DNA of 64,000 nucleotides from contig CDROCS010000506.1 in the NCBI GenBank assembly GCA_977020255.1, positions 2,914,001 to 2,978,000 of the forward strand, given 5' to 3'. Positions 23,728 through 45,357 of this stretch are shown one piece after another; within the stretch, counting starts at the first letter, position 1; every line of letters starts with the position of its first letter. Source of the stretch: Obrimoposthia wandeli (Eukaryota). The position numbers and the translations under genes were made by a program. The notes under the pieces were generated by a model that saw only the letters and a program-made list of their open reading frames with translations, ran no database searches and was not told the origin of the DNA.

Positions 23728-24642
23728 CTAGCTGGCACTCCAAACTTGTTGGCCAGTACGGCTGAAGTTATAACCTCCAAGTTGGTCGCCTTTAGCTTGG
23801 ATCTCCATTGACGATAACGCCTGCAGTAATTGCTGCTGCAAAGTGCGGAAGTAAATATTCTTCGGGATCACCAGTTCAAATGCTTCAGTGCTTAATGGAA
23901 TGAAGCCCAAGCCAAATTCACCCGCTGTACTTTGACTGGCACAACCAACGTCTGCTTCACCACGGGCAATGCAAGAAGCTAATTCACGTTCGCTATGACA
24001 GGTTTCTGCAGCGGTAAGCATATCGACTGTGTAAGCATGATTATGTAACCATTCTCCCAGAGCTCGCATACTGCCAGCACCTTCTTGACGAAGTGCCCAA
24101 CGCCAACGAGAGGTGAGTAATTCAGTTAAGTTTAACGATCGAGAATTAACTAAATCAGCGAGTTCTTTACTCACGACTAAGCCTTGTTGACGTTCAAAGG
24201 CATGGATCAGCACCCAGTTTTTATGTCCTGGATATTGCTGCAATAAAGCCGGATGACGCAAGGCTGCTTCTTCCGCATGACCCCAATGGATCGCGCATAT
24301 ATCCACATGGCCTTTACTGAGCATGGCTAAACCTTGGCGCGTACCTGTTGAGGTATAACCAACCAATGCTGTGCTGCCCAGTTTCTGCGCCATCTTGCCG
24401 ACGACCAACTGTAACAGTGGATCATCGGAACCTGCGATAAGTAAGCGGTCGTTAAGCACGCCGTTATGACAAGACTCCAGTAACCATTTATCTAACATAG
24501 CTTTGGGAAATAACCATTTACCCGTTACTTTTGTCGCAGGCAAGTGACCATCATTCGCCAAGGTGTAGACCTTTTTTTCATTCAGGTCTAAATATTCCGC
24601 GACTTGCTTTACGTTCATGAACGCGGGGGTATTTTCGCTCAT
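23728..24642 (-). CDS. Excisionase/MerR-like HTH fused to a molybdate/tungstate periplasmic-binding-protein-like domain (TaoR-like regulator)
   Basis: N-terminal MNVKQVAEYLDLNEKKVY...KVTGKWLFP HTH. C-terminal AGSDDP, STGTRQGL, RQEGAGS, GEADVG PBP-like motifs. 4-bp overlap with fdhD. Confidence 0.75.
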   Translation of the reverse strand: MSENTPAFMNVKQVAEYLDLNEKKVYTLANDGHLPATKVTGKWLFPKAMLDKWLLESCHNGVLNDRLLIAGSDDPLLQLVVGKMAQKLGSTALVGYTSTGTRQGLAMLSKGHVDICAIHWGHAEEAALRHPALLQQYPGHKNWVLIHAFERQQGLVVSKELADLVNSRSLNLTELLTSRWRWALRQEGAGSMRALGEWLHNHAYTVDMLTAAETCHSERELASCIARGEADVGCASQSTAGEFGLGFIPLSTEAFELVIPKNIYFRTLQQQLLQALSSMEIQAKGDQLGGYNFSRTGQQVWSAS

Positions 24643-25499
24643 GCAGTCTTACCGACAACAGCTTGTACTTCTGCGTCTGGACCTTTTACATCTAAGATCA
24701 AGTTCGCCATACCGTTATACACTTGGAAGCGATTACCTTTAGCACGCGCGACCATAGTAATGCCTAATTTTTTCGCTAAATCGTAGCCCATTTGCGTTGC
24801 ACCAGAGCGCGATAGCAATACTGGAATACCCATTTGCGCGACTTTAATCACCATCTCTGACGTGAGGCGACCAGTCGTATAAAAGATCTTGTCTTCACCC
24901 GTTTGGCCTTTTAACCACATTTCCCCAGCCAAAGTATCAACGGCGTTATGGCGACCTACATCTTCGACAAATGACAAGATCTCGGTGTCTTTACATACCG
25001 CACAGCCATGTACAGCACCAGCGGCTTTATACGTTGCGTTGTGATGCGTTAATGCTTCTAACAAGCCATACAATTTTGATTGGCGTAATTTAGGTTGTGG
25101 CAGTGTTATGCCTTCTAATTTTTTCATCACGTTACCGAACATAGTGCCTTGGCCACAGCCTGAGGTAACGGTTTTCTTGGTTAATTTCTCTGCTAATCCA
25201 TCGGTACTTTCACGCGTGATCACGGCTGCTGAATTGGTATCCCAATCAATAATCACAGATTCAATAGCGGTAATGTCTTCAATAAAGCCTTGGTTTTTTA
25301 AATAACCTAATACCAGATCTGAAGGGCGTGCGCCGAGTGTCATCACTGTCACGATTTCCACCCAATTTAAGTAGATCGTGAGCGGGTGCTCGCAGGCGAT
25401 CTCTTTGGTCATGGTATCGCCATATTCATCCATGATGTCAACTGTCATGGTGTGTTCAACTGAAGAATTGGTTCTAATTATTTTTGGTAATTGCGGCAT
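24639..25499 (-). CDS. fdhD: Formate dehydrogenase accessory sulfurtransferase
   Basis: Motifs TSGCGQG, GAVHGCA, EDVGRHNAVD, TTGRLTSEMV. Likely start ATG 25499. Confidence 0.93.
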   Translation of the reverse strand: MPQLPKIIRTNSSVEHTMTVDIMDEYGDTMTKEIACEHPLTIYLNWVEIVTVMTLGARPSDLVLGYLKNQGFIEDITAIESVIIDWDTNSAAVITRESTDGLAEKLTKKTVTSGCGQGTMFGNVMKKLEGITLPQPKLRQSKLYGLLEALTHHNATYKAAGAVHGCAVCKDTEILSFVEDVGRHNAVDTLAGEMWLKGQTGEDKIFYTTGRLTSEMVIKVAQMGIPVLLSRSGATQMGYDLAKKLGITMVARAKGNRFQVYNGMANLILDVKGPDAEVQAVVGKTA

Positions 25500-25538
25500 C
25501 CGAAATTCCTGCTGGTTTATATATCTATGAAGAGGTAA

Positions 25539-25555
25539 AGCAAAGTTCATTCCAA
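25539..25555 (-). promoter_or_regulatory. sigma54-type -24/-12 element for fdhD and the regulator
   Basis: Minus strand TTGGAATGAACTTTGCT: GG-N10-GC with a perfect TTGCT but a non-canonical -24 flank. Confidence 0.5.
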
Positions 25556-25616
25556 CTTACACTTAAGCGTCGAAGTAACTTGGCTATTACTCGTTTATTT
25601 GTCATTTCTTTCTAAC

Positions 25617-25633
25617 TTGGTCTAAATTTTGCT
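25617..25633 (+). promoter_or_regulatory. sigma54-type -24/-12 element for DUF3305-DUF3306
   Basis: TTGGTCTAAATTTTGCT: GG-N10-GC. Confidence 0.5.
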
Positions 25634-25695: not shown

Positions 25696-26262
25696 GTGCA
25701 ACTACGTGATGAAGATAAACCTCTAAATAAAGGTGATGAAGATAAGCACCTAAATAAGGGTGATGAACATAAGCGCTTAGCGAAAGACGAATCAAGCTGG
25801 CCAATCGCCTTCGGTCTTCGTTCTGAAGAAAAACAAGTTGGGCGTTGGACTACTTTGTCTTGGTCTATCGAGAATGTCGAATTATATGAGCAAGCAGCTG
25901 CGATAAATGATGATGAGGTTAGTACTACACCCTCTAATAACGTTGTTAATACGACTCGCTATGAAAGAACACTGTACTTATACCGCGATGAACGGACTGA
26001 TTACCGTTTTAACCTCAGCTCACAAGACCCTCATCTATTTATTGTTTGTGAAGTGACTGACGAGCAGTTTACGCCATTACTGATCACCGCTGCGCAAAGT
26101 GTTGCGAGCAGTTATATGGATGGTGACTATCAAGTGTTGCACATTCAAATGCCATTACCAGTGCAAGCTTGGATGGAAGCATTCATCGGTAGAAACGGCG
26201 AACTGATTGAATTTAAAAAGAAACGTTGTAAAGACAAGAAAGGGCGTTCAAGTGGCCAGTAA
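25696..26262 (+). CDS. DUF3305-family protein (FDH-associated)
   Basis: LYRDERTDYRFNL, PHLFIVC and position in the fdh cluster. GTG start after AAGGAG. Confidence 0.8.
   Translation: MQLRDEDKPLNKGDEDKHLNKGDEHKRLAKDESSWPIAFGLRSEEKQVGRWTTLSWSIENVELYEQAAAINDDEVSTTPSNNVVNTTRYERTLYLYRDERTDYRFNLSSQDPHLFIVCEVTDEQFTPLLITAAQSVASSYMDGDYQVLHIQMPLPVQAWMEAFIGRNGELIEFKKKRCKDKKGRSSGQ
25708..25788 (+). repeat. 27-bp in-frame tandem repeat x3 (DEDKPLNKG / DEDKHLNKG / DEHKRLAKD)
   Basis: Units gatgaagataaacctctaaataaaggt, gatgaagataagcacctaaataagggt, gatgaacataagcgcttagcgaaagac. Confidence 0.9.
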
Positions 26263-27016
26263 CTTTTTTCAACGTTGGTCAGATCGCTCATTAGCGGCAA
26301 AAGACCATACAGAAACTGATTTAGTCGTCACTAAAGACGCTGTTGTCGAAACTGAGAATCAGGGCTCAGAGCTAACATTAAAGCGCGATGCAGAGCTGGA
26401 TATTGAGCATGTTTCAGAGCCACACGCTGAATCGGCAGCGGATCTAGCGCTATCGACGCCATCGACAGATGTTACTGATGAGCAGGTCGAAGTTGAACTC
26501 ACTATTGATGATGCCGATAAGGTCACCTTTGATAGTGGTGTTGCTTCATTTCTACAGCATGGCGTTGATAAATCAGTAAAAAAAGCAGCGTTGGCGAAAT
26601 TATTTCATGCTGATGAATTTAACTATATCAGTACTATGGATGATCACACCGAGGATTTTTCTAATATTCCTAAGCTTGATGAGAGCATCGCGAAACAGTT
26701 GCGTGGTTGGGTTAAAACAGTATTGGAAGAACCTGAAGCTGAATTGGTTGAAGACACTGAGCTAGTTGAAGAAGATGAGGTATTAGCCGCTACTGAAACT
26801 GATCCGGAAACTGAATCTGGAGCAATTGCAGCCCCCAATACCGCTATAGATGATGAAGCTGTTCAAGCTATCACGGCTGATAATAGTTCGGCGTCCTGTT
26901 GTGATAAAAATTGTTGTGGTGAAAAGAGCTGTGATGAAAATAGTTGTAGTGAAAAAAATGGTGAAGAACAAAAAAACCAGCATCAGCAACACCTTCAACA
27001 GGCGGGTGAGACATAA
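26252..27016 (+). CDS. DUF3306-family acidic protein (FDH-associated)
   Basis: NFFQRWS, ALAKLF, DDHTEDF. GTG start overlaps the DUF3305 stop. Confidence 0.8.
   Translation: MASNFFQRWSDRSLAAKDHTETDLVVTKDAVVETENQGSELTLKRDAELDIEHVSEPHAESAADLALSTPSTDVTDEQVEVELTIDDADKVTFDSGVASFLQHGVDKSVKKAALAKLFHADEFNYISTMDDHTEDFSNIPKLDESIAKQLRGWVKTVLEEPEAELVEDTELVEEDEVLAATETDPETESGAIAAPNTAIDDEAVQAITADNSSASCCDKNCCGEKSCDENSCSEKNGEEQKNQHQQHLQQAGET
26897..26971 (+). repeat. 15-bp in-frame degenerate repeat x5 encoding a Cys-rich tail (CCDKN CCGEK SCDEN SCSEK NGEEQ)
   Basis: Units tgttgtgataaaaat, tgttgtggtgaaaag, agctgtgatgaaaat, agttgtagtgaaaaa, aatggtgaagaacaa. Confidence 0.85.
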
Positions 27017-27041
27017 AGGGACAAATAACCCTAATTTTAAT

Positions 27042-27090
27042 CGGGACATTTTGTTCCATGCACGATTGTTTATAGCGACATTATGTCCCG
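27042..27090. promoter_or_regulatory. Pair of candidate sigma54-activator binding sites
   Basis: CGGGACA-TTT-TGTTCCA (27042-27058) and AGCGACA-TTA-TGTCCCG (27074-27090), centres 32 bp apart, 110 and 78 bp upstream of the -24 GG. Confidence 0.65.
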
Positions 27091-27157
27091 TTTAGGAATA
27101 AGTAAACAATCCCTCTCTGACTTTAACTCTTTATAGGTCATTTTATTCCGTTAAAAG

Positions 27158-27174
27158 TTGGTTCGGTTATTGCT
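27158..27174 (+). promoter_or_regulatory. sigma54 promoter of the ferredoxin-chaperone-fdhABC operon
   Basis: TTGGTTCGGTTATTGCT: GG-N10-GC, with upstream palindromes. Confidence 0.65.
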
Positions 27175-27302: not shown

Positions 27303-29021
27303 ATGTTAAAAAGTACTTTAGAAACATTTACTGATCGCAACGGTCAAGCACGCTTTGCGGCGATAGCCGATACCGTTGAATTATCTAATCTGATCCCGCC
27401 GACGGTATCTTACGAAAGTCGTGGCAACTTATTGATCATTGGTGCTTACGATATTATCACTGCACTAGCACCGCAATTTGCAACATTGAATTCAGTAACA
27501 CTGCTGGCGACGTCTGCTGCAACAGATGCCGCGTCAGCGACGAACGATAGCAATACCAAAGATAAAGTATTTTTTAGTAATGAAGTAACAATTAAAGGTT
27601 ACCTAGGTGCGTTCGAAGTGAACTGCCGTGTAGCGGGTAGCTTACTGAGTATCTATACCAATTTAGCGGAAGTGACCATTGGTGGTGATAGTTTCGATTT
27701 AGTCGTTGATATGAGCGCGGATAGCCTTATTCAAACCGAAATACCAGCGCCAGGTTATTACCCTGTTGGTAGCGGTAAAGCAGCGATTGCCGATGTTATT
27801 GAAACCTTACCGGAAATGCTCGGTACGTTTGATAAACCAAAATATTTTCGTTTAGACAATGATATTTGTGCGCATTCATCACGTGGCGTGGGTGGTTGTA
27901 CACGTTGTGTTGATGCTTGTCCTGCAGGTGCGTTAACCAGTAATGGCCACGCTATCGAAATTAATCCGTTCTTATGCCAAGGCGTAGGGACGTGTGCCAC
28001 AGCTTGTCCGACTGAAGCGATTACTTACGCATTACCAGAACCAGAAAAGACCCAGAACTTTATTTATCGTTTATTAAACAGTTATCAAATGGCGGGTGGC
28101 GAAAAGCCAACGATCTTATTCTTTGGTAATCGTGACGAACAAACGGTAGCAGAAAAATTACCGTTATTACCATCAAATGTTATTCCTATTGCTTTAGAAG
28201 AGTTGGCTACGGTTGGTGTTGATACTTGGTTTAGCGCCTTACTCTATGGTGCGCATCAAGTATTACTGGCTACTAACATCGCCTATATTCCAGCGACGAT
28301 TGATCGCGTGCTTAATGATGAACTGGCCATTGCCAATACCTTCTTAACTGAGATGGGTTTTGAAGCTGGGCGTATTTGTTTGTTTGATTTAGATTCGGCA
28401 GCAGACTTTGTCGCGTTTACTCAACCGGTATTACCTGTTGTTGAGAATAAGATCGCGGTAATGGATAACGCAGTATTAGCAGAGCAACTGTCTGGCACTA
28501 AACGTGAAAAATTATTTACTGCGCTAGATAAATTATCAGCACAAAGTCCACTGCAACCGACACATTCGGTGATGCCTGAAAATGCACCTTATGGCAGCGT
28601 GGAATGTAAAACTGATGATTGTACCTTGTGTATGGGTTGCGTTGCAGTGTGTCCAACAAGTGCATTACATGCTGTTGGTGATCGCCCTGGTCTACAGTTT
28701 AGAGAACAAGATTGTGTGCAGTGTGGTCTTTGTGAAAAAGCCTGTCCTGAACAAGTAATTAGTCTTAAACCGGGTCTGAATTGGGACGCGGAAAGCCGTC
28801 GAAGTGTGGTGATGATCCACGAAGAAGAGGCGGCTTGTTGTTTAAGTTGTGGTAAAGCGTTTGCACCTGCATCGATGATTGCCATGTTAACGGAAAAACT
28901 CCAAGGTCACAGTCAATTTCAAGGTGATGCTATTCGCCGTTTATCTATGTGTGAAGACTGTCGTGTTCGCGATATTTTTTCAGATATGGCTGACGATCCA
29001 CTACGTCAGTTAAACGTGTAG
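27303..29021 (+). CDS. Polyferredoxin / 4Fe-4S cluster-binding protein of FDH clusters
   Basis: Motifs CTRCVDACP, CQGVGTCATACP, CTLCMGCVAVCP, CVQCGLCEKACP, CLSC, CEDC. Confidence 0.9.
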   Translation: MLKSTLETFTDRNGQARFAAIADTVELSNLIPPTVSYESRGNLLIIGAYDIITALAPQFATLNSVTLLATSAATDAASATNDSNTKDKVFFSNEVTIKGYLGAFEVNCRVAGSLLSIYTNLAEVTIGGDSFDLVVDMSADSLIQTEIPAPGYYPVGSGKAAIADVIETLPEMLGTFDKPKYFRLDNDICAHSSRGVGGCTRCVDACPAGALTSNGHAIEINPFLCQGVGTCATACPTEAITYALPEPEKTQNFIYRLLNSYQMAGGEKPTILFFGNRDEQTVAEKLPLLPSNVIPIALEELATVGVDTWFSALLYGAHQVLLATNIAYIPATIDRVLNDELAIANTFLTEMGFEAGRICLFDLDSAADFVAFTQPVLPVVENKIAVMDNAVLAEQLSGTKREKLFTALDKLSAQSPLQPTHSVMPENAPYGSVECKTDDCTLCMGCVAVCPTSALHAVGDRPGLQFREQDCVQCGLCEKACPEQVISLKPGLNWDAESRRSVVMIHEEEAACCLSCGKAFAPASMIAMLTEKLQGHSQFQGDAIRRLSMCEDCRVRDIFSDMADDPLRQLNV

Positions 29022-29030
29022 GGCTACATT

Positions 29031-29645
29031 ATGGGATCACAAAATATGTCACAGTCATTTACTGAAGATGCAGCATTGCGCATCGATATTTACAGCTTAC
29101 TTGCACACTTATTACGTAAAGCACCGGATGCAGAGGTGATTGATTGGTTAGCCAATCTCGACGTTGATGCGCCGAATGCATTAATTCAAACCACGGGTAT
29201 GTCAGCTGCTTGGCCACTATTGAAGTTGGCCGCACAAAAAACCTTATTAACAGCCGCGGAAGATGAATATCAAGATCTGTTTATTGGTATAGGCCATGGT
29301 GAAATAGTCCCGTTTGGTTCTTGGTTTCTTACTGGATCATTAATGGAAATGCCGCTTGCACATTTACGTCATGATTTGAAAAAACTGGGTTTTCAACGTG
29401 ATGAATCAGTAAAAGAACCGGAAGATCATATCGCCGCCTTGTTAGAAGTGATGACCATGTTGGTGAGCGAAAGTAATCATCGCGATCAAGCTGAGTTTTT
29501 TAATCGTCATATCGACACTTGGTTTGAACGTTTTTGCCAAGATTTGAAAAAAGCGAAAAGTGCCGTGTTTTACAGCGCAGTCGCCGAATTAGCTTGGCAA
29601 TTTTTAAGTATTGAAAAAATACGTTTTATCGACGTAAAAAAATAA
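29031..29645 (+). CDS. TorD/DmsD-family molybdo/tungstoenzyme chaperone
   Basis: PFGSWF and KEPEDHIAALLE motifs, located next to fdhA. Confidence 0.88.
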   Translation: MGSQNMSQSFTEDAALRIDIYSLLAHLLRKAPDAEVIDWLANLDVDAPNALIQTTGMSAAWPLLKLAAQKTLLTAAEDEYQDLFIGIGHGEIVPFGSWFLTGSLMEMPLAHLRHDLKKLGFQRDESVKEPEDHIAALLEVMTMLVSESNHRDQAEFFNRHIDTWFERFCQDLKKAKSAVFYSAVAELAWQFLSIEKIRFIDVKK

Positions 29646-29667: not shown

Positions 29668-29871
29668 ATGAGCAAACAAAATAAGCCGGATGAAGACCGT
29701 CGCCAACTGTTAAAAAACATTGGTTTAGGTGTTGCAGTAGGCGCTATCGCAACGGGTGTATCCACCACTGCGAATGCGTCTGTTGATAGCCAAGAAAAGA
29801 ATGATAAACAACAAAAAACAACAGGTTACCATGAAACTCAACACATTCGTGACTATTACGATACTTTGTAA
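29668..29871 (+). CDS. Small Tat-motif protein preceding fdhA
   Basis: DRRQLLK twin-arginine motif, hydrophobic stretch, C-terminal GYHETQHIRDYY. AAGGAG RBS. Confidence 0.82.
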   Translation: MSKQNKPDEDRRQLLKNIGLGVAVGAIATGVSTTANASVDSQEKNDKQQKTTGYHETQHIRDYYDTL

Positions 29872-32751: not shown

Positions 32752-33369
32752 ATGGCGAGTATGAAATTTCTGTGTGACTCGAAGCGTTGTATTGAATGCA
32801 ATGGTTGTGTTACCGCATGTAAGAACGAAAATGATGATGCCCTTGAATGGGGTATCCAACGCCGCCGTGTTGTTACTTTAAACGACGGCGAACCGGGTGA
32901 AAGCTCAATCTCTGTGGCATGTATGCATTGTACTGATGCACCGTGTATGGCTGTTTGTCCTGCAGATTGCTTTGAGCGTACTGAAGACGGCATCGTATTA
33001 CACGACAAAGATCTGTGTATCGGTTGTGGTTATTGCTTGTTTGCCTGCCCATTTGGCGCGCCGCAATTTCCAAAACAAGATGCCTTTGGTGAACGTGGCA
33101 AGATGGATAAATGTACCTTCTGTGCTGGTGGACCAAATGTAGAAGATGGTTCAGCTGAAGAGAAAGAAAAATACGGCGCTAACCGTATTGCTGAAGGTAA
33201 GTTACCTATGTGTGCATCGCTTTGTTCTACTAAAGCCTTGCTTGCTGGTGATGCATCTAAGATCTCTGATGTTTATGCTGAGCGTGTTGTTGCCCGTGGT
33301 GCTAAAAATGCTGGTTGGGCAAGTACTGCTGACCTCTCTTATGATGCGAGTAAACCGCAAGAAAGCTAA
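32752..33369 (+). CDS. fdhB: Formate dehydrogenase Fe-S beta subunit
   Basis: Four Cys clusters: CIECNGC, CMHCTDAPCMAVCP, CIGCGYCLFACP, KCTFC. Confidence 0.95.
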   Translation: MASMKFLCDSKRCIECNGCVTACKNENDDALEWGIQRRRVVTLNDGEPGESSISVACMHCTDAPCMAVCPADCFERTEDGIVLHDKDLCIGCGYCLFACPFGAPQFPKQDAFGERGKMDKCTFCAGGPNVEDGSAEEKEKYGANRIAEGKLPMCASLCSTKALLAGDASKISDVYAERVVARGAKNAGWASTADLSYDASKPQES

Positions 33370-38727: not shown

Positions 38728-39312
38728 TTATTGCTGTCCAAATTGGGCTAGTTCCACAGGGGTATTTAAATTAACGAAGGCATTTGGCTGATCGCTAAAG
38801 TCCACTGTGAGCATATTGCACTGACGATACAACAGGATGATCTTACGATCGCCATTATCTAAAAATGCTTCTAATTTAGGTAAAATACGGCGATGTAACA
38901 GCGTTACTACGGGTTGAATATGTTCACCATCATGGGCAACGAGGATATCTGTGTCAGCTTGGCAAGCTGCGGCCATTCGCGCGACTAAATCATGCGGTAG
39001 TTGTGGGCAATCACAAGGTACAAAGCCAATCCATTCAGCATCTGTTAAATGTAAAATTGCAGCATGCATACCACCGAGTGGTCCTGGGTAACCTTGTAAT
39101 TTATCACCAAATACCGCACCGTATTGGCTGTACTCATCTTGGTTGCGATTGGCGTTAATTGCAATTTCAGCTGTCTGTGGTGCCAAGGTATCGATAACAT
39201 GCTCAATCATGGCTTTACCCGCTAATTGCACTAAGCCTTTATCGTTGCCACCCATGCGGCTTGCTTGCCCGCCTGCTAAAATTACCCAACTTGTTTGTTC
39301 AGCCGAAAGCAT
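38728..39312 (-). CDS. mobA: Molybdenum cofactor guanylyltransferase
   Basis: Motifs [32 protein letters not shown]. Confidence 0.94.
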
Positions 39313-40003
39313 AGTTATCCTTATCTTTTTTAATGAGCTGTAAATCTGCTCGTTCGATTAGTTTGCTATTGCTAATGCACCATTGACGGCGGCAAAGTGC
39401 GGTAAGCGCATTTTGCTGGTGGCTGGTGATGACTAACGTTGAGCCGCGCTCGAGTAAATCTTTGGCTAACACCACTTGGCGTTCGATGGATTCTTTATCC
39501 ATACTGGCACTTGATTCATCCATTAACAGCACGCTGGGTTTTAGTACCCACGCTCTGGCCATTGCGACACGTTGGCGTTCGCCACCTGACAATACCGAAA
39601 TATGTTCATTAGCTAAGGTCTCTAACCCTACCATACGTAAGGCAGTTATCGCTTCACTTCGTTGTTCTTGGCGGCCTTTTAGGGCGAATTTTAAACCATA
39701 ACAGACATTATCCAATACGCTGCCATCAAACATATACGGTGTTTGGTGCATATAGATAACGCCATTTTTGCCATTACTTTTAAATAATCGTGCAAACCAG
39801 CTTTGGTTCTGTAGGTTGACAGTACCTGTGGTTGGGCTTTGTAAACCGGATAATATTTTTAGCAGGGTGGTTTTACCCACGCCGTTACCGCCAGTAAGGT
39901 AAATCGCTTCTTGCGGGCCGAATTTAAGGTGAGGTATGTGAAAAAGCAGCCGATCTTTAAAGCGAATCGAGATATCTTCTGCTTGAATTGTAATTTGCGA
40001 CAT
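39299..40003 (-). CDS. tupC: Tungstate ABC transporter ATPase
   Basis: [21 protein letters not shown]. In an operon with tupAB. Confidence 0.85.
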
Positions 40004-40017
40004 GACCTTACCTCAGC

Positions 40018-40719
40018 CTAATTGGTACGCAAGTGGGCTTTACCACGGGCGATAGATAATAAGAAATTCAGTCCTAGGGCTAAGATTAATAACACCATGC
40101 CTAGGGCTACCCCTTGTGCAAATGCGCCTTTTGAACTTTCGAGAGCGATTGCAGTGGGGATATTACGGGTCGAATTGAGAATATTACCGCCGACCATCAT
40201 TGAACAGCCAACTTCGGTAATAATACGACTAAATGCGGCGATAACAGCAGCAAGTAGCGGGAATCGACATTCCCACATCAAACTTAATAATGCGCGGGGT
40301 AAACTTGCCCCCAATGTCAGTGCGGTTTCCCAAGCGCGGCGATCACTGTTTTGAAATGCCGCGTGCATCATTGACACTAAAATGGGAAAGCACACCATCA
40401 TCTGTCCCAATATCATCGCTTTTTGGGTGAATAGCATTTGCCAATCACCTAGCGGACCAGCGCGAGACAGCGTCATGTAAAGTAACAAGCCAATCACCAC
40501 GGTTGGGATTGATTGGCAGGTATTAAATAAGGATAGTATTAACCAACGCCCAGGGAATTTTCCGTAGGCGAGGGCAAAGGCGATCACTAATGCTGGTACG
40601 AGTACCAAGGTGATCGCCAGCAAAGACACTGAGAATGACACACCGACAATTCCCCACAGTGCCATATCGCCACTGAAGAGAAGTTGTACTGCGTCTTGGG
40701 TCGTTTGCCAGATATTCAT
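40018..40719 (-). CDS. tupB: Tungstate ABC transporter permease
   Basis: IPTVVIGL, EVGCSMMVGGNI, TRNIPTAIALE. Confidence 0.88.
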   Translation of the reverse strand: MNIWQTTQDAVQLLFSGDMALWGIVGVSFSVSLLAITLVLVPALVIAFALAYGKFPGRWLILSLFNTCQSIPTVVIGLLLYMTLSRAGPLGDWQMLFTQKAMILGQMMVCFPILVSMMHAAFQNSDRRAWETALTLGASLPRALLSLMWECRFPLLAAVIAAFSRIITEVGCSMMVGGNILNSTRNIPTAIALESSKGAFAQGVALGMVLLILALGLNFLLSIARGKAHLRTN

Positions 40720-40746
40720 TCGTTATCTAAGTTACTCGTTGGTTGA

Positions 40747-41586
40747 TTAAGACTTGGCATTAGCGACAAATAATTGCTCGCCACCACGTTTATAACTGTT
40801 GATCATAGTCTGTGCTTTTGGATTAACTAACCAATCGCTGAAAATCTTTGCACCTTGATAGTTGATGCTTGGGTAACGGCTTGGATTCACTAAGATAACT
40901 TGGTACGGGTTAAATAAACGTTTGTCACCTTGTACTACAATCTTCAGGTCAAGTTTGTTTTGGTAAGCTAACCAAGTACCACGGTCAGTTAATGTATATG
41001 CCTGTAGTTCCGATGCCATGTTCAGTGTTGGTCCCATGCCTTGGCCTACCGCTTTGTAGCCTGAGAAAGTAGGTTCCATTTTAGTTTGTGCCCACAGACC
41101 TAATTCTTTCTTGTTCGTGCCTGAGTCATCACCACGAGAGATGAAAGTTGCGTTGTAAGATGCGATGCCAGCGAGTGCTTTTACAACATCTTTATCGGCA
41201 TTAATTTTAGCCGGATCATTTTTTGGACCAACCAATACAAAGTCGTTATACATCAATTTACGTGGTAGTACGCCGTAACCAGCTGCCACGAATTTCGCTT
41301 CTGCATTCGCTGCGTGCGTCATGACTAAATCAACATCGCCATTTTGACCCATACGCAGTGATTTACCGGTACCTGCGGCAAGTACGTCGACTGTATAACC
41401 TGTGTCTTTTTTGAATTCTGGTAATAAGAAATCAAGCAGTCCTGAATGATAAGTACTCGTTGTCGTCGCCAAACGGATCTTCATGTCGTCAGCGGCATGA
41501 ACACCGGCTGTTGTTACAAGTGCGAATAGCGCAAGTAATGTTTGGATACATTTCATCGGTGTTACAGTCATCGGTTTTACAGTCAT
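40747..41586 (-). CDS. tupA: Tungstate-binding periplasmic protein
   Basis: TupA signature LATTTST, GTGKSL, YNDFVLVGP, SRGDDSGT. Confidence 0.92.
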   Translation of the reverse strand: MTVKPMTVTPMKCIQTLLALFALVTTAGVHAADDMKIRLATTTSTYHSGLLDFLLPEFKKDTGYTVDVLAAGTGKSLRMGQNGDVDLVMTHAANAEAKFVAAGYGVLPRKLMYNDFVLVGPKNDPAKINADKDVVKALAGIASYNATFISRGDDSGTNKKELGLWAQTKMEPTFSGYKAVGQGMGPTLNMASELQAYTLTDRGTWLAYQNKLDLKIVVQGDKRLFNPYQVILVNPSRYPSINYQGAKIFSDWLVNPKAQTMINSYKRGGEQLFVANAKS

Positions 41587-41658: not shown

Positions 41659-41675
41659 AGCAAATTAGATGCCAA
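41659..41675 (-). promoter_or_regulatory. sigma54 promoter of tupABC-mobA-mobB/moeA
   Basis: Minus strand TTGGCATCTAATTTGCT, a near-consensus -24/-12 element. Confidence 0.75.
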
Positions 41676-41801
41676 ATTAAAAAATACACCATATAAAACG
41701 CTGTTAATACCAATAAGTGGTTAATTTAAAAGGTAAATAATTTCGTTAATAAATTGAATGAAAATAAAGGCTTGAAACAGTTTTGACTTTGTTAGTCGAT
41801 A

Positions 41802-41818
41802 TGAGACAAAATGTCGCA
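41802..41818. promoter_or_regulatory. Candidate activator binding site, same palindrome as at the fdh operon
   Basis: TGAGACA-AAA-TGTCGCA, about 137 bp upstream of the tupA -24 element and 30 bp before the response regulator start. Confidence 0.65.
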
Positions 41819-41848
41819 ACTTAAAAATTACGGTAGTTATTTATATTT

Positions 41849-43315
41849 ATGTCTGAATTTACTTCTTCTCCCTCTTGGGCTGCAGTCTCGGTACTTGTTG
41901 TTGATGATGAACCGGGTATGCGCGCGATCTTAAAGAAAGCCTTAAGCAAAAAATTTGCGCAAGTCGATACCGCGGGTAGCATCGAAGAAGGGGAAGAGCT
42001 GCGTAAGCGTTGTCATTTCGATTTATTGATTGTCGATATCAACTTACCGGGTCGTTCAGGTATTGAATGGCACGAAGCATTTGATCCGCAAACGCGCCGT
42101 AGCGATGTGATCTTCATGACAGGTTATGCCGATTTAGATACTGCGATTAAAGCTTTACGTGCAGGGGCCTCAGATTTTATTTTAAAACCGTTTAACCTCG
42201 AGCAAATGATGCAATCGGTGAGTCGTTGTATCGAGCGTCGTTTAGTTGAACGCCAGAACTTTGCCTTGCAACGCGATATTGAGCGCACTTTCCCGATTGA
42301 TATTATTGGTGACGCCAGTAAAACCTTAGCGATGAAAAAACTGATCACCCAAATTGCGCCATCTATGGCCGCGGTATTAGTTGAAGGTGAATCTGGCACA
42401 GGTAAAGAATTAGTCGCGCGTGCGTTACATCAACTGAGTTTACGTAATGGTCCTTTTGTGCCGTTAAACTGCGGTTCTATTGCCCCTGATCTATTAGAAA
42501 GTGAATTATTTGGTCATACTCAAGGTGCATTTACCGGCGCGAAAAAAAGCCGTGAAGGGTTATTTCGCGTCGCCAATGGCGGTACCTTATTCCTGGATGA
42601 AATTGGTGAAATGCCACTGGCTATGCAGTCATCGTTATTACGCGTATTAGAGCAAAAAGCTATCCGCCCAGTCGGTGGTGAACGCGAGATCCCCGTTGAT
42701 GTACGTATTGTGGCGGCGACTAACCGTAATTTAAAACAAGAAGTCGATGCCGGTCGTTTTCGTCAAGATCTGTATTATCGTTTAAATGTATTAACGGTTG
42801 AGTTACCACCGTTGCGTGATCGCGTTGAAGATATTCCGGCATTGGCGCATCACTTTACCCTGAAATTATCCAATGACTTGGGCATGAAAGGGGTCAGCTG
42901 GACACATGAAGATATACAAGCCATGCAAGCTTATGACTGGCCAGGTAATATTCGTGAATTACGCAATTTAATGGAACGCTGTATTTTACTGGGTAAACCG
43001 CCTGCGGAATATTGGCGTGAGCTGCAAGGTGATACCGAACCATTGCCAAGATCGGCTATTGGCGAATTTGATCAAACACGTATGGATGAAGCGAATTTAA
43101 CTAGCCCTTGTCACTGCTCATCTGTTGTCGATGGTGATGAAGAACAATATTGTTATCCAACGGCATGGACATTAAAACAAGTAGAAAAAGCACATATCAT
43201 GCAGGTTGTTGATTCTCATGAAGGCAATAAGTCAGCAGCGGCGCGTAAGCTTGGCGTAGCACGGAAAACGTTAGAGCGTAAATATAAAGAATGGGTGGAT
43301 GAAGCGGCATTATGA
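41849..43315 (+). CDS. sigma54-dependent NtrC-family response regulator (REC-AAA+-HTH)
   Basis: VVDDE receiver, GESGTGKE, GAFTGA, FLDEIGE, RQDLYYRL, WPGNIREL, C-terminal HTH. Confidence 0.95.
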   Translation: MSEFTSSPSWAAVSVLVVDDEPGMRAILKKALSKKFAQVDTAGSIEEGEELRKRCHFDLLIVDINLPGRSGIEWHEAFDPQTRRSDVIFMTGYADLDTAIKALRAGASDFILKPFNLEQMMQSVSRCIERRLVERQNFALQRDIERTFPIDIIGDASKTLAMKKLITQIAPSMAAVLVEGESGTGKELVARALHQLSLRNGPFVPLNCGSIAPDLLESELFGHTQGAFTGAKKSREGLFRVANGGTLFLDEIGEMPLAMQSSLLRVLEQKAIRPVGGEREIPVDVRIVAATNRNLKQEVDAGRFRQDLYYRLNVLTVELPPLRDRVEDIPALAHHFTLKLSNDLGMKGVSWTHEDIQAMQAYDWPGNIRELRNLMERCILLGKPPAEYWRELQGDTEPLPRSAIGEFDQTRMDEANLTSPCHCSSVVDGDEEQYCYPTAWTLKQVEKAHIMQVVDSHEGNKSAAARKLGVARKTLERKYKEWVDEAAL

Positions 43316-45357
43316 AAATGAAACAATTTATATTGCTATGGATTAAACGCTTTCGGACTATGGTGCGTTATCGTTTATTAGTGCTGACCTCGGTACCTAT
43401 TATTCTAACGTTGTTCGCCCTATTCGGGCTGGCTATGTATTGGACGGTGACGTATACCTGGCAAAACGCCTTGATGAACGTTAAAGCCGATCGGACGGTT
43501 GCACATAACAGTATTGCACTGTTACAGAAAGAGCAGCGCCTGCAGCTTAAATCACTGTCATTGTCGTACGATTTTCAGCACTTATTACGCACAGATAAAG
43601 CCAAATTATCTGCTTGGGTAAATCAGCAGACAGCCAGTAATTCGTTAGATTTTGTGGTTTTGCATCCTGCTACAGATTTGGATACTTTCCCACTGGCTAA
43701 TCAGCAATCGTTATTGGCGGGTAAACCACAAACATTCTTTCAAGTATTGAACAGTGATCAGCTGTCGACGTTGAATAAAAACCTGCCAATTAATGCGCAA
43801 ATCCCGTTATTACTGGAGCACACATTAGAGTCAAAAGGTTTAGTTAGCCGTAATTTATTGCCAATCTTTGACAGTAATGAGCAACTGCAATGGATCCTCG
43901 ATGGCGGTATATTATTAAATAACAGTACTTTGTTAGTTGATCGTATTCGTGACCTTGTTTACACCCCAGGTACATTGCCGTTGGACAGTATTGGTACGGT
44001 GACGCTGTTCATGGATGATATTCGCGTGAGTACTAATGTGCCATTAGACAGTGGTGATATTAACGGTAGAGCTATTGGTACCCGGGTTTCTGCAGAGGTA
44101 AAGCAGCAAGTATTAGTTGATGGGCAAGAGTGGGTGGGTCGTGCTTTTGTTTATGACAATTGGTATATATCTGCTTATGAACCGCTACGAGATTATGATG
44201 GTAATGTCATTGGCATGTTGTATACCGGTTATTTAGAATGGCCCTTAGTAGAAACGTTTTTAACCAATATTGCCGAATTTAGCATTGGTATTATTGCGGT
44301 ATTATTACTCTCGGGTGGCTTGGTATATCGTGGTGCGCGCGATTTATTTAGACCGATAGAGAAGATCCACAATGTGGTGAGAGTGGTACCGCTAGGGCTC
44401 AATCGCCGAATTGGTGATTTGGGGCTATGCAAAGATCACGAGTTAGCGGCGTTTGGTGAACAGTTTGATTCCATGCTCGATCAATTAGAACAACGCAATG
44501 ATGTGATTAAACAAGCGTCTGTGGAGCTTGAAGATAAAGTACGTACGCGAACCCAAAGCTTGCATGATAAAACCCAAGAGTTAGAACAGTACATTAAGTT
44601 GTTAAACCAAACTCGCAGCAAGCTAATTATGAGTGAAAAACTTGCCGCGCTGGGGGAACTCACTGCTGGTATTGCCCATGAAATTAATAATCCGACCGCC
44701 GTGATTTTAGGTAATGTCGAATTGTTGCAACTCGAGCTAGGTGACGATAGCCAACGTGTAACGGAAGAGCTTGAAGCGATACATGAACAAATTGATCGTA
44801 TCCGTAATATTACCCGCAGTTTATTGCAGTACAGCCGTCAAGGTGGCGTGCAAGATGAAGTGACTTGGCAGCATTTAAATCATATCGTCAAAGAGAGCCT
44901 GACGTTAGTGCGTTCTGGTACGAAGTCGGCCAACGTACAAGTTGAATCACAATTAGAGGCCAAATGCTGCGTGGAAGCCAATCGTCATCAATTGCTGCAA
45001 GTGTTGGTTAATTTGCAGATGAACGGTGTGCATGCCATGGATGACAAAGGCATGCTGAAAATTAAAACGGAAGATTGGCTTGATGATCAGGGTAATACTA
45101 TCGGTGCGGTTGTACATATTAGTGATCATGGTTGTGGTATTAGCGAAGATAATTTAGCGCGTATTTTCGATCCGTTTTTTACCACGCGTCGTAGCGGTAC
45201 TGGTTTAGGTTTATCGGTGAGCCAGAGTATTATTAGCGAAGTTGGCGGTAAGATCACAGTGCAATCAGATCTGGGCATCGGTTCGACATTTTCGATTTAT
45301 TTACTCGAAAAAGCCGTTGTGCATAATGATTTATTGTTACCCGTTGAAGTGTACTAA
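43312..45357 (+). CDS. Membrane sensor histidine kinase with a Cache-like periplasmic domain and HAMP
   Basis: Two TM segments, Cache-like RVSTNV...RAIGT...YISAYEPLRD...VIGMLYTG, H-box AGIAHEINNP, DHGCG, GTGLGL. 4-bp overlap with the regulator. Confidence 0.92.
   Translation: MKMKQFILLWIKRFRTMVRYRLLVLTSVPIILTLFALFGLAMYWTVTYTWQNALMNVKADRTVAHNSIALLQKEQRLQLKSLSLSYDFQHLLRTDKAKLSAWVNQQTASNSLDFVVLHPATDLDTFPLANQQSLLAGKPQTFFQVLNSDQLSTLNKNLPINAQIPLLLEHTLESKGLVSRNLLPIFDSNEQLQWILDGGILLNNSTLLVDRIRDLVYTPGTLPLDSIGTVTLFMDDIRVSTNVPLDSGDINGRAIGTRVSAEVKQQVLVDGQEWVGRAFVYDNWYISAYEPLRDYDGNVIGMLYTGYLEWPLVETFLTNIAEFSIGIIAVLLLSGGLVYRGARDLFRPIEKIHNVVRVVPLGLNRRIGDLGLCKDHELAAFGEQFDSMLDQLEQRNDVIKQASVELEDKVRTRTQSLHDKTQELEQYIKLLNQTRSKLIMSEKLAALGELTAGIAHEINNPTAVILGNVELLQLELGDDSQRVTEELEAIHEQIDRIRNITRSLLQYSRQGGVQDEVTWQHLNHIVKESLTLVRSGTKSANVQVESQLEAKCCVEANRHQLLQVLVNLQMNGVHAMDDKGMLKIKTEDWLDDQGNTIGAVVHISDHGCGISEDNLARIFDPFFTTRRSGTGLGLSVSQSIISEVGGKITVQSDLGIGSTFSIYLLEKAVVHNDLLLPVEVY

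What the first reader, a model, noticed from the sequence alone, without database searches (positions are those of the whole stretch)
23728..45357. Self-contained tungsten-formate respiration island wired as a sigma54 regulon
Seen: all four metabolic transcription units have a TTGG-N8-TTGCT element in the right orientation shortly before the first start codon. They are fdhD (TTGGAATGAACTTTGCT, 25539-25555, minus), DUF3305 (TTGGTCTAAATTTTGCT, 25617-25633), ferredoxin-fdhABC (TTGGTTCGGTTATTGCT, 27158-27174) and tupA (TTGGCATCTAATTTGCT, 41659-41675, minus). My rough estimate at 60% AT is about 0.5 chance hits in the whole window on both strands, so four well-placed hits are unlikely to be random. 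The island encodes its own GAFTGA activator and kinase, metal uptake (TupABC), cofactor insertion (MobB-MoeA, MobA), sulfuration (FdhD), chaperone and enzyme. Known: similar gene sets occur in Vibrio and Shewanella, and E. coli uses cytoplasmic FhlA with sigma54 for formate genes. Inferred: one membrane-sensed signal co-induces tungstate uptake, cofactor maturation and the enzyme. I am not aware of this circuit being dissected, but I could not search the literature.
Basis: partly seen in the sequence, partly recalled or inferred. Interest (0 to 1): 0.78.

Follow-up and report, generated by a model that had tools for sequence, protein, structure and literature searches.

The report
Sigma-54 formate dehydrogenase and tungstate regulon
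A Moritella gene cluster for periplasmic formate oxidation, tungstate uptake and cofactor insertion really is driven by four conserved sigma-54 promoters, but the same wiring was already shown by experiment in Vibrio cholerae; what remains open is how its two-component regulator works, and its sensor looks most like known formate sensors.

Summary
All four TTGG-N8-TTGCT elements are at the stated coordinates. They rank 1, 2, 4 and 7 of 128,000 window positions with a sigma-54 matrix trained on unrelated V. cholerae sites. They are conserved at the orthologous promoters in Moritella, Photobacterium, Vibrio and Aliivibrio.

Dong and Mekalanos (2012) showed RpoN binding and RpoN-dependent expression for the same four units in V. 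cholerae: VC1516-10, VC1519, VC1518-17 and VC1523-27.

- A palindrome, TGnGACA-N3-TGTCnCA, is the likely binding site of the island's NtrC-type activator. It is conserved at a fixed offset upstream of the Fe-S/fdh operon and of tupA. It is absent from the back-to-back fdhD and DUF3305 promoters.
- The kinase has a periplasmic two-module Cache sensor. Its only sequence-detectable relatives of solved structure, which are also its best structural matches, are formate-bound chemoreceptor sensors (8PY0, 8PY1).
- A TunR-like HTH plus molybdate/tungstate-binding regulator is co-transcribed with fdhD.
- The island is not self-contained. It has no molybdopterin synthesis genes, it carries a strain-specific chitinase insert, and its tungsten specificity is unproven.

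Verdict: a new member of a known kind, of moderate interest.

The parts
23728..24642 (-). TunR-like regulator: HTH_17 (MerR/excisionase-type) plus PBP_like oxyanion-binding domain. Overlaps the fdhD stop by 4 nt, so it is probably co-transcribed with fdhD.
   Evidence: Pfam PF12728 4e-13 and PF12727 2e-42. Present in Moritella and Photobacterium loci; a homologue was found beside fdhD in only one Vibrio-labelled locus, L046.
24639..25499 (-). fdhD, the formate dehydrogenase sulfurtransferase. The likely start is the ATG at 25499.
   Evidence: TIGR00129 5.5e-41 (140.5 bits, just under the curated cutoff of 140.9); RBS context.
25539..25555 (-). Sigma-54 promoter of fdhD-tunR (TTGGAATGAACTTTGCT).
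   Evidence: 16.1 bits, rank 2 in the window. A site of 12 bits or more is found in 72 of 77 orthologous loci.
25617..25633 (+). Sigma-54 promoter of DUF3305-DUF3306 (TTGGTCTAAATTTTGCT), back-to-back with the fdhD promoter.
   Evidence: 12.3 bits, rank 7. A site of 10 bits or more in 74 of 77 loci, and of 12 bits or more in 62 of 77. The spacer between the two promoters varies from 22 to 173 bp.
25696..26262 (+). DUF3305 protein.
   Evidence: PF11749 7e-25. NCBIfam lists MobA-DUF3305 fusions.
26207..27016 (+). DUF3306 protein, with an acidic low-complexity middle and a Cys-rich C-terminus. The start codon is uncertain.
   Evidence: PF11748 1e-22; translation.
27041..27059 (.). Weaker upstream activator site (TCGGGACATTTTGTTCCAT).
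   Evidence: 4th best palindrome-matrix hit in the window. A tandem weak site about 32 bp upstream of the strong one is seen in most loci.
27073..27091 (.). Strong upstream activator site (core GACATTATGTC); its centre lies 78 bp upstream of the -24 GG.
   Evidence: Exact core found 3 times in the window, 2 of them at island promoters. Conserved with its centre 78-81 bp from the GG in 64 of 72 sites, the rest about 11 or 24 bp further.
27158..27174 (+). Sigma-54 promoter of the Fe-S/TorD/TAT/fdhABC operon (TTGGTTCGGTTATTGCT).
   Evidence: 13.2 bits, rank 4. A site of 12 bits or more in 77 of 78 loci. A metatranscriptome contig of higher depth begins at 27161 (weak evidence).
27303..29021 (+). 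Poly-ferredoxin (multiple 4Fe-4S clusters), first gene of the fdh operon.
   Evidence: Fer4 families.
29031..29645 (+). TorD/DmsD-family Tat proofreading chaperone.
   Evidence: NF003442 2e-20.
29668..29871 (+). Small 'formate dehydrogenase region TAT target' protein (67 aa).
   Evidence: TIGR02811 2.8e-26, above the curated cutoff.
29884..32739 (+). FdhA catalytic subunit, with a Tat signal (SRRAFM) and Cys rather than Sec at the active site (ARICHSTT).
   Evidence: TIGR01591 1.6e-140; sequence.
32752..33369 (+). FdhB iron-sulfur subunit.
   Evidence: NF038355 7e-100, above the curated cutoff.
33533..34591 (+). FdhC cytochrome b subunit.
   Evidence: TIGR01583 1.7e-72.
36863..38689 (-). MobB-MoeA fusion, last gene of the tup-mob operon.
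   Evidence: NF011060 2e-285.
38728..39312 (-). MobA.
   Evidence: TIGR02665 7.5e-69.
39299..41586 (-). tupA (40747-41586), tupB (40018-40719) and tupC (39299-40003), a TupABC-type oxyanion ABC transporter. TupA carries the TTTS motif.
   Evidence: NF041772 8e-66 is the only family hit for TupA but is below the curated cutoff. TupB hits NF041773 9e-52. Sequence.
41659..41675 (-). Sigma-54 promoter of tupABC-mobA-mobB/moeA (TTGGCATCTAATTTGCT).
   Evidence: 16.9 bits, rank 1. Present in 41 of 41 tupA loci with an adjacent regulator and in 1 of 19 without. Contig L115, whose tupA site is identical to the published V. cholerae site, carries it at the same place.
41801..41819 (.). Upstream activator site (ATGAGACAAAATGTCGCAA) in the tupA/regulator intergenic region. 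It overlaps a weak sigma-70-like -10 for the regulator gene.
   Evidence: Best palindrome hit in the window. Conserved in 41 of 41 loci. Sigma-70-like TTGACT-18-CAAAAT at 41783-41812.
41849..43315 (+). NtrC-type response regulator and enhancer-binding protein (REC, AAA+ with GAFTGA at residue 226, HTH_8).
   Evidence: Pfam; GAFTGA.
43312..45357 (+). Sensor histidine kinase: TM 17-48, periplasmic two-module Cache sensor 49-314, TM 315-342, HisKA, HATPase.
   Evidence: Pfam sCache_3_3 5e-29 and a partial Cache_3-Cache_2 match; hydropathy; AF2 models; fold matches.

Best explanation
This is the Moritella version of the Vibrionaceae-type respiratory formate dehydrogenase regulon. RNA polymerase with sigma-54 starts four transcription units:
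- fdhD plus a TunR-like regulator;
- DUF3305-DUF3306;
- poly-ferredoxin, TorD-like chaperone, TAT peptide and fdhABC;
- tupABC-mobA-mobB/moeA.

The adjacent two-component pair supplies the activator. The kinase has a periplasmic Cache sensor, and I think formate is its most likely ligand (about 50%). It phosphorylates the NtrC-type regulator. The regulator binds tandem palindromes, TGnGACA-N3-TGTCnCA, about 80 and 110 bp upstream of the fdh-operon promoter, and one about 135 bp upstream of the tupA promoter. From there it remodels the closed sigma-54 complex.

The two back-to-back fdhD and DUF3305 promoters have no such site nearby. They are probably fired more weakly by the same activator, either looping from the fdh-operon sites 1.4 kb away or acting from solution.

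A cytoplasmic TunR-like oxyanion-binding regulator, itself in the regulon, probably adds metal feedback.

What is shown and what is inferred:
- Shown here: the motifs, their conservation, the domain architectures and the fold matches.
- Shown elsewhere: RpoN binding and RpoN dependence in V. cholerae.
- Inferred: the regulator-palindrome pairing (about 75%), the ligand, the looping and the TunR role.
For: Sigma-54 sites.
- They rank 1, 2, 4 and 7 in the window with an independent matrix.
- Sites of 12 bits or more occur upstream of fdhD in 72 of 77 loci, of DUF3305 in 62 of 77 and of the Fe-S gene in 77 of 78. Five control regions gave 0 or 1 locus of at least 12 bits: tunR, DUF3306, TAT, fdhB and fdhC. 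The region upstream of torD gave 9 of 80.
- For tupA, 41 of 41 loci with the divergent regulator have a site, against 1 of 19 without.
- The bases between GG and GC differ between clades while the spacing is kept.

Published experiments. V. cholerae RpoN ChIP-seq peaks and RpoN-dependent expression cover VC1516-10 (22-69 fold), VC1518-17 (7.5-11 fold), VC1519 (3 fold) and VC1523-27 (2-6 fold) (PMC3439928). The published VC1523 site occurs verbatim upstream of tupA in contig L115, which has the same regulator/kinase/tup-mob layout.

Palindrome.
- Two of the 3 exact GACA-N3-TGTC cores in 64 kb lie upstream of island promoters.
- 143 of 169 matrix hits across 80 loci (1.7 Mb) lie upstream of the Fe-S gene.
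- The offsets cluster at 78-81, 89-91 and 103 bp, which are steps of about one helical turn.

Activator. It has REC, GAFTGA and HTH_8.

Kinase sensor.
- The only PDB sequences found with a profile of the sensor are the formate-bound sensors 8PY1 and 8PY0, at E 8e-4 and 3e-3.
- They are also the best VIA matches: Z 16.5 and 15.7, rmsd 2.3 and 2.1 A, against 13.8 for the next hit.
- The Pfam signature, full sCache_3_3 plus partial Cache_3-Cache_2, is the one that defines the formate-sensor family.

Other. No convincing sigma-70 promoter lies in front of the four units.
Against: - There is no transcription start or mutant data for Moritella. The metatranscriptome evidence is contigs only, and one contig runs through the fdhD promoter region.
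- An EMSA with RpoN alone failed on the V. parahaemolyticus VP1510 promoter, and those authors called the regulation indirect.
- The fdhD and DUF3305 promoters lack the palindrome in nearly all loci, so a single activator for all four units is not demonstrated.
- The key formate-binding arginine lies outside the confidently aligned block. The invariant R238-x-x-T241 fits only if the kinase has a 3-residue loop insertion, and the pocket-floor Phe is a Tyr in the kinase.
- The paper that defined the family found such domains almost only in chemoreceptors.
- The comparisons are among related genomes, so the counts are not independent events. The palindrome matrix was trained on the same loci it was then counted on.
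Confidence: 0.72

Rival explanations
1. The circuit is as described, but the kinase senses the metal oxyanion (tungstate or molybdate) or a redox or oxygen cue rather than formate. The system would then be primarily a metal-uptake regulator that also switches on the enzyme.
For: The regulator-kinase pair is always next to tupA (41 of 41), whereas in Photobacterium it is often more than 10 kb from the fdh genes. S. oneidensis SO4718 is annotated as the regulator for tungstate (molybdate) transport and is induced under anaerobic iron-reducing conditions. The sensor has a second, unassigned module at residues 114-201. The key arginine could not be aligned.
Against: Oxyanion sensors are normally periplasmic-binding-protein folds, and here that role is already covered by TupA and by the TunR-like protein. 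The sensor's best and only sequence-detectable structural relatives are formate sensors.
Confidence: 0.3
2. The fdhD and DUF3305 promoters are served by a different enhancer-binding protein, or are weak RpoN sites with little regulatory output. In that case only the fdh operon and the tup-mob operon form the regulon of the adjacent activator.
For: No palindrome lies within 300 bp of either promoter in Moritella or Photobacterium, and only 5 weak hits occur in the fdhD-DUF3305 intergenic region across the 80 loci. The spacer is unconserved and can be as short as 22 bp. In V. cholerae the RpoN effect is small for fdhD (3 fold).
Against: The sigma-54 elements themselves are as well conserved as those of the fdh operon. 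Their function (sulfuration, Moco-linked DUFs) fits the same regulon. The tandem sites of the fdh operon are always within about 1.5 kb, a distance over which NtrC-type activators are known to work (established knowledge, not tested here).
Confidence: 0.25
3. The four motif matches are chance occurrences in AT-rich intergenic DNA, and the genes are transcribed from ordinary sigma-70 promoters.
For: The -24 halves of two sites (TGGTCT, TGGTTC) are far from TGGCAC.
Against: The sites rank highly with an independent matrix. They are conserved in 60-77 of about 77 loci at each promoter, against about 0 in most control regions. ChIP-seq and RNA-seq exist for V. cholerae. Sigma-70-like sites are fewer than in shuffles.
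Confidence: 0.02

Closest known systems
V. cholerae VC1510-VC1527 cluster in the RpoN regulon (Dong and Mekalanos 2012, PMC3439928)
   Same: The same four transcription units each have an RpoN ChIP peak with a TGG-N8-TTGC motif and RpoN-dependent expression: fdh operon, fdhD, two hypothetical genes, and ABC transporter plus molybdopterin genes. An NtrC-type regulator (VC1522) and a kinase are encoded in the cluster.
   Different: The gene order differs. In Vibrio, tup-mob, the regulator-kinase pair and fdhD are contiguous. In Moritella, the tup-mob-regulator module sits downstream of fdhC. Moritella and Photobacterium add a TunR-like gene behind fdhD. That paper did not study the activator, its DNA site or its signal.
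E. coli FhlA / sigma-54 formate regulon (fdhF, hyc, hyp)
   Same: A sigma-54-dependent, enhancer-binding-protein-activated set of formate-metabolising molybdoenzyme genes, probably responding to formate.
   Different: FhlA is a one-component cytoplasmic sensor with GAF domains and no receiver domain, and it controls a cytoplasmic, selenocysteine FDH-H with hydrogenase. Here there is a two-component system with a periplasmic sensor and a periplasmic, Cys-type, quinone-linked FDH, plus metal uptake. The two work alike but this is not a member of that family.
Formate-binding Cache sensors (PacF, Atu0526, PDB 8PY0/8PY1; bioRxiv 10.1101/2024.05.17.594639)
   Same: Same Pfam signature, best structural superposition (Z about 16, rmsd about 2.2 A), and conserved Thr and Tyr pocket residues in the aligned block.
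   Different: The output is a histidine kinase, not a chemoreceptor. An extra PAS-like module is inserted between the N-terminal helix and the Cache core. The pocket-floor Phe is a Tyr. The arginine could not be mapped securely.
TunR of Desulfovibrio (tungstate-responsive regulator family; recalled from Kazakov et al. 2013, not readable here)
   Same: The same two-domain architecture, an N-terminal excisionase/MerR-type HTH plus a C-terminal PBP_like oxyanion-binding domain, encoded next to Mo/W genes.
   Different: Here it is a promoter-distal gene of a sigma-54 operon with fdhD. Its operator and effector are unknown.
AioXSR-type systems (periplasmic sensing, kinase, sigma-54 activator driving a periplasmic molybdoenzyme; PMC5908839)
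   Same: The same logic: the substrate of a periplasmic Mo enzyme is sensed outside the cell and relayed to a sigma-54 promoter by an NtrC-type regulator.
   Different: AioX is a separate binding protein, whereas here the sensor is a Cache domain within the kinase. The enzyme and the regulon content also differ.

Membership tests
Sigma-54 (-24/-12) promoter | GG and GC elements with TGG-N8-TTGC spacing, upstream of a gene and pointing at it. | tested here: met
   four sites of 12.3-16.9 bits, 40-129 nt upstream of the start codons.
Sigma-54 (-24/-12) promoter | Conservation of the element at orthologous promoters. | tested here: met
   62-77 of about 77 loci at each fdh-side promoter; 41 of 41 for tupA with an adjacent regulator.
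Sigma-54 (-24/-12) promoter | RpoN binding, RpoN- and activator-dependent transcription, and a start about 12 nt downstream of the GC. | not testable with these tools
   Shown for V. cholerae orthologues by ChIP-seq and RNA-seq. Here there are only contig breaks at 25641/25655 and 27143/27161 in metatranscriptomes, which cannot define a start.
NtrC-type two-component enhancer-binding protein | Receiver domain, AAA+ sigma-54 interaction domain with a GAFTGA loop, and a C-terminal Fis-type HTH. | tested here: met
   PF00072, PF00158 and PF02954; GAFTGA at residue 226. All NCBIfam equivalog scores are below their cutoffs, so it is not NtrC, AtoC, ZraR or LuxO itself.
NtrC-type two-component enhancer-binding protein | Cognate palindromic upstream activator sites 70-150 bp from the promoter. 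| tested here: inconclusive
   Met at the fdh-operon and tupA promoters. Not found at the fdhD and DUF3305 promoters. Binding itself was not tested.
E. coli FhlA-type formate activator | N-terminal GAF formate-sensing domains and no receiver domain. | tested here: not met
   The activator has a receiver domain and no GAF domain. The FhlA model matches only the AAA+ part, at 249 bits against a cutoff of 830.
Formate-binding Cache sensor family (PacF/Atu0526) | Full sCache_3_3 or (partial) Cache_3-Cache_2 Pfam match. | tested here: met
   sCache_3_3 at 5e-29 over profile positions 3-101 of 107; Cache_3-Cache_2 at 4e-22 over profile positions 100-201 of 299.
Formate-binding Cache sensor family (PacF/Atu0526) | Structural similarity to formate-bound sensors above that to other Cache domains. 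| tested here: met
   8PY1 Z 16.5, rmsd 2.3 A, 136 residues aligned; 8PY0 Z 15.7, rmsd 2.1 A, 146 residues aligned; the next hit has Z 13.8 and rmsd 3.9 A. These are predicted-model comparisons.
Formate-binding Cache sensor family (PacF/Atu0526) | Conserved pocket residues: Arg (PacF R142), Thr (T145, T158), Tyr, and the pocket-floor Phe. | tested here: inconclusive
   T257 and Y289 align with the Thr and Tyr and are invariant in 29 kinases. The Phe position is the invariant Y304. The Arg lies outside the aligned block, and the invariant R238-x-x-T241 fits only with a 3-residue insertion (residue numbering deduced).
Formate-binding Cache sensor family (PacF/Atu0526) | Formate binding. | not testable with these tools
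   Needs calorimetry or a thermal shift assay on the purified domain.
TupABC tungstate transporter | TupA-type binding protein with the TTTS anion-binding motif, plus TupB and TupC. | tested here: inconclusive
   TupA is the only NCBIfam hit but scores 222 bits against a cutoff of 400, and TupB scores 176 against 320. TTTS is present. Discrimination between tungstate and molybdate cannot be read from the sequence.
TunR-family oxyanion-responsive regulator | HTH_17-type DNA-binding domain fused to a PBP_like (PF12727) domain. | tested here: met
   There is no solved homologue. The family description is recalled, because the paper could not be read.

The most novel reading that the evidence does not exclude
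The kinase is a periplasmic formate sensor built on the PacF/Atu0526-type Cache module, a family so far reported almost only in chemoreceptors. The pair would then be a formate-responsive two-component sigma-54 switch that turns on respiratory formate dehydrogenase, tungstate/molybdate uptake and late cofactor assembly together in marine Vibrionaceae, Moritella and probably Shewanella. Two of its four promoters would be fired without a proximal enhancer, from sites 1.4 kb away.
Probability: 0.45. Interest if true: 0.55.

Novelty: new member of a known kind. Interest (0 to 1): 0.38.

Why it matters
Formate is a major electron donor for marine and gut gammaproteobacteria. The sigma-54 dependence of the Vibrio respiratory formate dehydrogenase has been known since 2012, but its activator (VC1522-type) and its signal have stayed orphan.

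This analysis gives the activator a testable DNA site. It gives the kinase a testable ligand, formate, through a sensor family that was recently solved. It also flags an oddity: two conserved sigma-54 promoters with no nearby enhancer. That turns a catalogue entry into a small set of direct experiments.

It does not reveal a new kind of system.

Tried and rejected
- Riboswitch or leader in the long 5' regions. An Rfam scan of 23000-46000 at E up to 1 found only a sub-threshold His_leader hit inside the chitinase region. No Moco or tungsten-cofactor riboswitch was found.
- Sigma-70 promoters. The consensus scan gave fewer hits than shuffles and none convincing in front of the four units. Only a weak one for the regulator gene is worth noting.
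- Inverted-repeat search in the three promoter regions. It missed the activator palindromes because they are short. A pattern search and a matrix built from the loci were needed.
- An activator site for the fdhD and DUF3305 promoters. None was found within 300 bp at up to 1 core mismatch in Moritella or Photobacterium. Some Vibrio clades have degenerate copies between or beyond the promoters.
- Transcription starts from public RNA. Only assembled contigs were available. The contig breaks are compatible with the DUF3305 and fdh-operon promoters but prove nothing, and one contig spans the fdhD promoter.
- Solved structures related to the TunR-like protein: none.
- Literature. I found nothing on VC1522, VC1521, SO_4717/18, TunR, tungstate with RpoN, or an enhancer-binding protein with formate dehydrogenase that dissects the activator or its signal. 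The TunR paper could not be opened.
- Exact V. cholerae site strings. Only the VC1523 site is present in the fetched loci, in L115. The V. cholerae reference was not among the 80 best FdhA loci.
- Base composition. The island is 43.5-43.8% GC against 41-42% in the flanks, too small a difference to call it a foreign island.
- Residue-level check of the pocket on the model.

Full report
**Observation**

Four occurrences are at the stated coordinates. All four are intergenic and point at the next gene.

The spacing is the canonical sigma-54 one, TGG-N8-TTGC. The fdhD element overlaps the longest fdhD ORF. An in-frame ATG at 25499, preceded by AGGA, is the likelier start, so the element lies about 40 nt upstream of the gene.

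For an independent measure I built a matrix from 33 V. cholerae RpoN ChIP sites published by Dong and Mekalanos, leaving out their four formate-related sites. The island's four elements rank 1st, 2nd, 4th and 7th among all 128,000 positions of the window.

**Genes**

It encodes an HTH_17 plus PBP_like protein (23728-24642), the architecture I recall for the tungstate-responsive TunR family.
- The fdh operon begins with a 572-residue poly-ferredoxin. It continues with a TorD-like chaperone, the 67-residue 'formate_TAT' protein, a Tat-exported FdhA, FdhB and the cytochrome b subunit FdhC.
- FdhA has cysteine, not selenocysteine, at the active site (ARICHSTT).
- TupA carries the TTTS motif, but it scores below NCBI's curated TupA cutoff.
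- Between fdhC and mobB-moeA lies a GH19 chitinase gene with a CBM5/12 module. It is absent at this junction in Moritella dasanensis and Moritella sp. JT01.
- No molybdopterin synthesis genes are present.

So 'self-contained' and 'tungsten' are both overstated.

**Whose genome, and conservation**

A search with FdhA returned 80 genomic loci. The window is Moritella: 99% identity to M. dasanensis. Photobacterium FdhA is 86-93% identical and Vibrio/Aliivibrio 83-86%.

The block fdhD(-), DUF3305, DUF3306, Fe-S, TorD, TAT, fdhABC is present in essentially all loci.

In the 350 nt upstream of each gene, the number of loci with a sigma-54 site of at least 12 bits is as follows.

| Region upstream of | Loci with a site of 12 bits or more |
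|---|---|
| fdhD | 72 of 77 |
| DUF3305 | 62 of 77 (74 of 77 at 10 bits or more) |
| Fe-S gene | 77 of 78 |
| tunR (control) | 0 of 26 |
| DUF3306 (control) | 1 of 77 |
| TAT (control) | 0 of 77 |
| fdhB (control) | 0 of 80 |
| fdhC (control) | 0 of 80 |
| torD (control) | 9 of 80 |

The bases between GG and GC change from clade to clade while the spacing is kept. The Fe-S promoter, for example, reads TTGGTTCGGTTATTGCT, TTGGTACAGCATTTGCT and TTGGCACGACATTTGCT in different clades. That is the signature of a functional site.

For tupA I used 65 metagenomic loci. Every locus in which the regulator-kinase pair lies divergently next to tupA has a TTGGCAy-type site (41 of 41). Only 1 of 19 more distant tupA loci without the pair has one.

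These loci are related to one another, so the counts are not independent events.

**Already known**

Table 2 of Dong and Mekalanos (PMC3439928) lists four units of V. cholerae V52. Each has an RpoN ChIP peak and RpoN-dependent expression.

| Unit | Function as listed | RpoN-dependent fold change |
|---|---|---|
| VC1516-10 | formate dehydrogenase | 22-69 |
| VC1519 | fdhD | 3 |
| VC1518-17 | two hypothetical proteins | 7.5-11 |

Their VC1523 motif, TGGCATCCCATTTGC, occurs verbatim upstream of tupA in contig L115. That contig has the same regulator/kinase/tup-mob layout as the window.

In V. parahaemolyticus the fdh operon falls 9-27 fold in an rpoN mutant, although RpoN alone did not shift the VP1510 promoter in vitro (PMC9817140).

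S. oneidensis SO4718 is annotated as a sigma-54-specific regulator for tungstate (molybdate) transport (PMC2667191).

So the four-promoter sigma-54 wiring is established. The searchable literature does not cover the role of the adjacent activator, its DNA site or the kinase's signal.

**The activator's site**

The exact core GACA-N3-TGTC occurs three times in 64 kb. Two of these lie upstream of island promoters, at 27077-27087 and 41805-41815.

Across the loci the extended palindrome TGnGACA-www-TGTCnCA lies upstream of the Fe-S promoter in 72 of 76 distinct sequences. Its centre is 78-81 bp from the GG in 64 of the 72 exact-core sites, and about 11 or 24 bp further in the rest, which are steps of roughly one helical turn. 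A weaker copy usually lies about 32 bp further upstream.

It also lies upstream of every regulator-linked tupA promoter, at more variable distances of 67-138 bp.

A matrix made from these sites, scanned over all 80 loci (1.7 Mb), puts 143 of 169 hits in front of the Fe-S gene. In the window, its four best hits are all inside the island.

I reached it independently and can confirm that it is conserved.

In the tupA/regulator intergenic region the palindrome overlaps a weak sigma-70-like -10 for the regulator gene. That would allow autorepression, but this is speculative.

**An unexplained asymmetry**

The fdhD and DUF3305 promoters are back-to-back. Their spacer ranges from 22 to 173 bp and is not conserved.

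They have no palindrome within 300 bp in Moritella or Photobacterium. Only five loci show weak hits in the fdhD-DUF3305 intergenic region.

Either the activator reaches them from the fdh-operon sites about 1.4 kb away, or from solution, or another activator serves them. The first would fit the smaller RpoN effects on these units in V. cholerae.

**The kinase**

The kinase has two transmembrane segments, at 17-48 and 315-342, around a 265-residue periplasmic domain.

Pfam gives a full sCache_3_3 match and a partial Cache_3-Cache_2 match. That is the signature Monteagudo-Cascales et al. use for the formate-binding Cache family, which includes PacF, Atu0526 and the formate-bound structures 8PY0 and 8PY1.

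An AlphaFold model built on 29 orthologues (pLDDT 88) shows an N-terminal helix and two PAS-like modules.

- Profile searches of all PDB sequences find only 8PY1 and 8PY0, at E 8e-4 and 3e-3.
- The same two entries head the Foldseek list.
- They also head the VIA alignment: Z 16.5 and 15.7, rmsd 2.3 and 2.1 A, 19-21% identity, against Z 13.8 and rmsd 3.9 A for the next hit.
- The sCache aligns with the helix plus the second module, so the first module (residues 114-201) is an extra insertion.

In the aligned block, the invariant residues T257 and Y289 match pocket residues of the formate sensors. The pocket-floor Phe is an invariant Tyr (Y304).

The key arginine lies just outside the aligned block. 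An invariant R238-x-x-T241 would match PacF R142-x-x-T145 only if the kinase has a 3-residue loop insertion.

I therefore rate formate as the most likely ligand, at about 50%, but not as shown.

**Other checks**

No riboswitch is detectable in the leaders.

Metatranscriptome contigs from two marine samples cover the region. They break at 25641/25655 and at 27143/27161, close to the DUF3305 and fdh-operon promoters. Contigs cannot define RNA ends, however, and one contig crosses the fdhD promoter.

**Verdict**

The sigma-54 wiring itself, however, is a published property of the orthologous Vibrio cluster, so this is a new member of a known kind.

The useful new content is the candidate enhancer, its absence from two of the four promoters, the overlooked TunR-like regulator and the formate-sensor-like kinase domain. 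All of these can be tested with standard experiments.

Noticed in passing
window 34592-36862 (chitinase ORF 34723-36381, - strand): A GH19 chitinase with a CBM5/12 module sits between fdhC and mobB-moeA. In M. dasanensis (L002) and Moritella sp. JT01 (L003) the two genes are about 100 bp apart. In L004 and L005 a different insert of about 6 kb occupies the same junction, so this junction takes up insertions repeatedly.
   Followed up: partly
window 52605-52619 (- strand): The third-best sigma-54 matrix hit in the window (TGGTATAAATATTGC, 15.0 bits) lies 114 bp upstream of xseA (exonuclease VII large subunit, 51121-52491), in the xseA/guaB divergent region. Conservation was not checked.
   Followed up: partly
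window 37969-37987: A near-perfect copy of the activator palindrome (GTGCGACAATTTGACCCAA) lies inside the mobB-moeA coding sequence and is present in all five Moritella loci that cover the gene. It could be functional or merely inherited.
   Followed up: no
window 23728-34591 compared with loci L006-L022 and L023-L080: Every gene of the Moritella fdh block is closer to Photobacterium than to Vibrio: fdhD 84-89% against 66-71%, the Fe-S gene 66-70% against 50-52%, torD 68-78% against 47-51%. The Fe-S promoter is letter-identical to that of several Photobacterium species, and only these two genera regularly carry the TunR-like gene. Moritella is not in the Vibrionaceae, so this suggests lateral exchange with a Photobacterium-like lineage.
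   Followed up: partly
window 26354 and 26905-26949 (DUF3306): A closely related strain in marine metatranscriptomes carries a 24-nt (AGAATC)x4 insertion after 26354 and a 45-nt in-frame deletion at 26905-26949. The acidic middle and C-terminal parts of DUF3306 are length-variable, and its identity drops to 52% even within Moritella.
   Followed up: no
window 41783-41812 (+ strand): A sigma-70-like TTGACT-18-CAAAAT lies in front of the regulator gene, and its -10 sits inside the activator palindrome. This would allow autorepression of the regulator-kinase operon. It is only a 9-of-12 consensus match.
   Followed up: no
window 45375-46487 (-), 46686-48707 (+), 49784-51001 (-): The island's right flank encodes an LpxR-family outer-membrane lipid A deacylase, a PhoX alkaline phosphatase, and a chemoreceptor with HAMP and signalling domains but no recognisable periplasmic sensor.
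   Followed up: no
loci L001-L080, region upstream of torD (3' end of the Fe-S gene): In 9 of 80 loci a sigma-54-like site of at least 12 bits lies inside the end of the poly-ferredoxin gene, upstream of torD (21 of 80 at 10 bits or more). It could be an internal promoter in some clades, or a coding-sequence coincidence.
   Followed up: no
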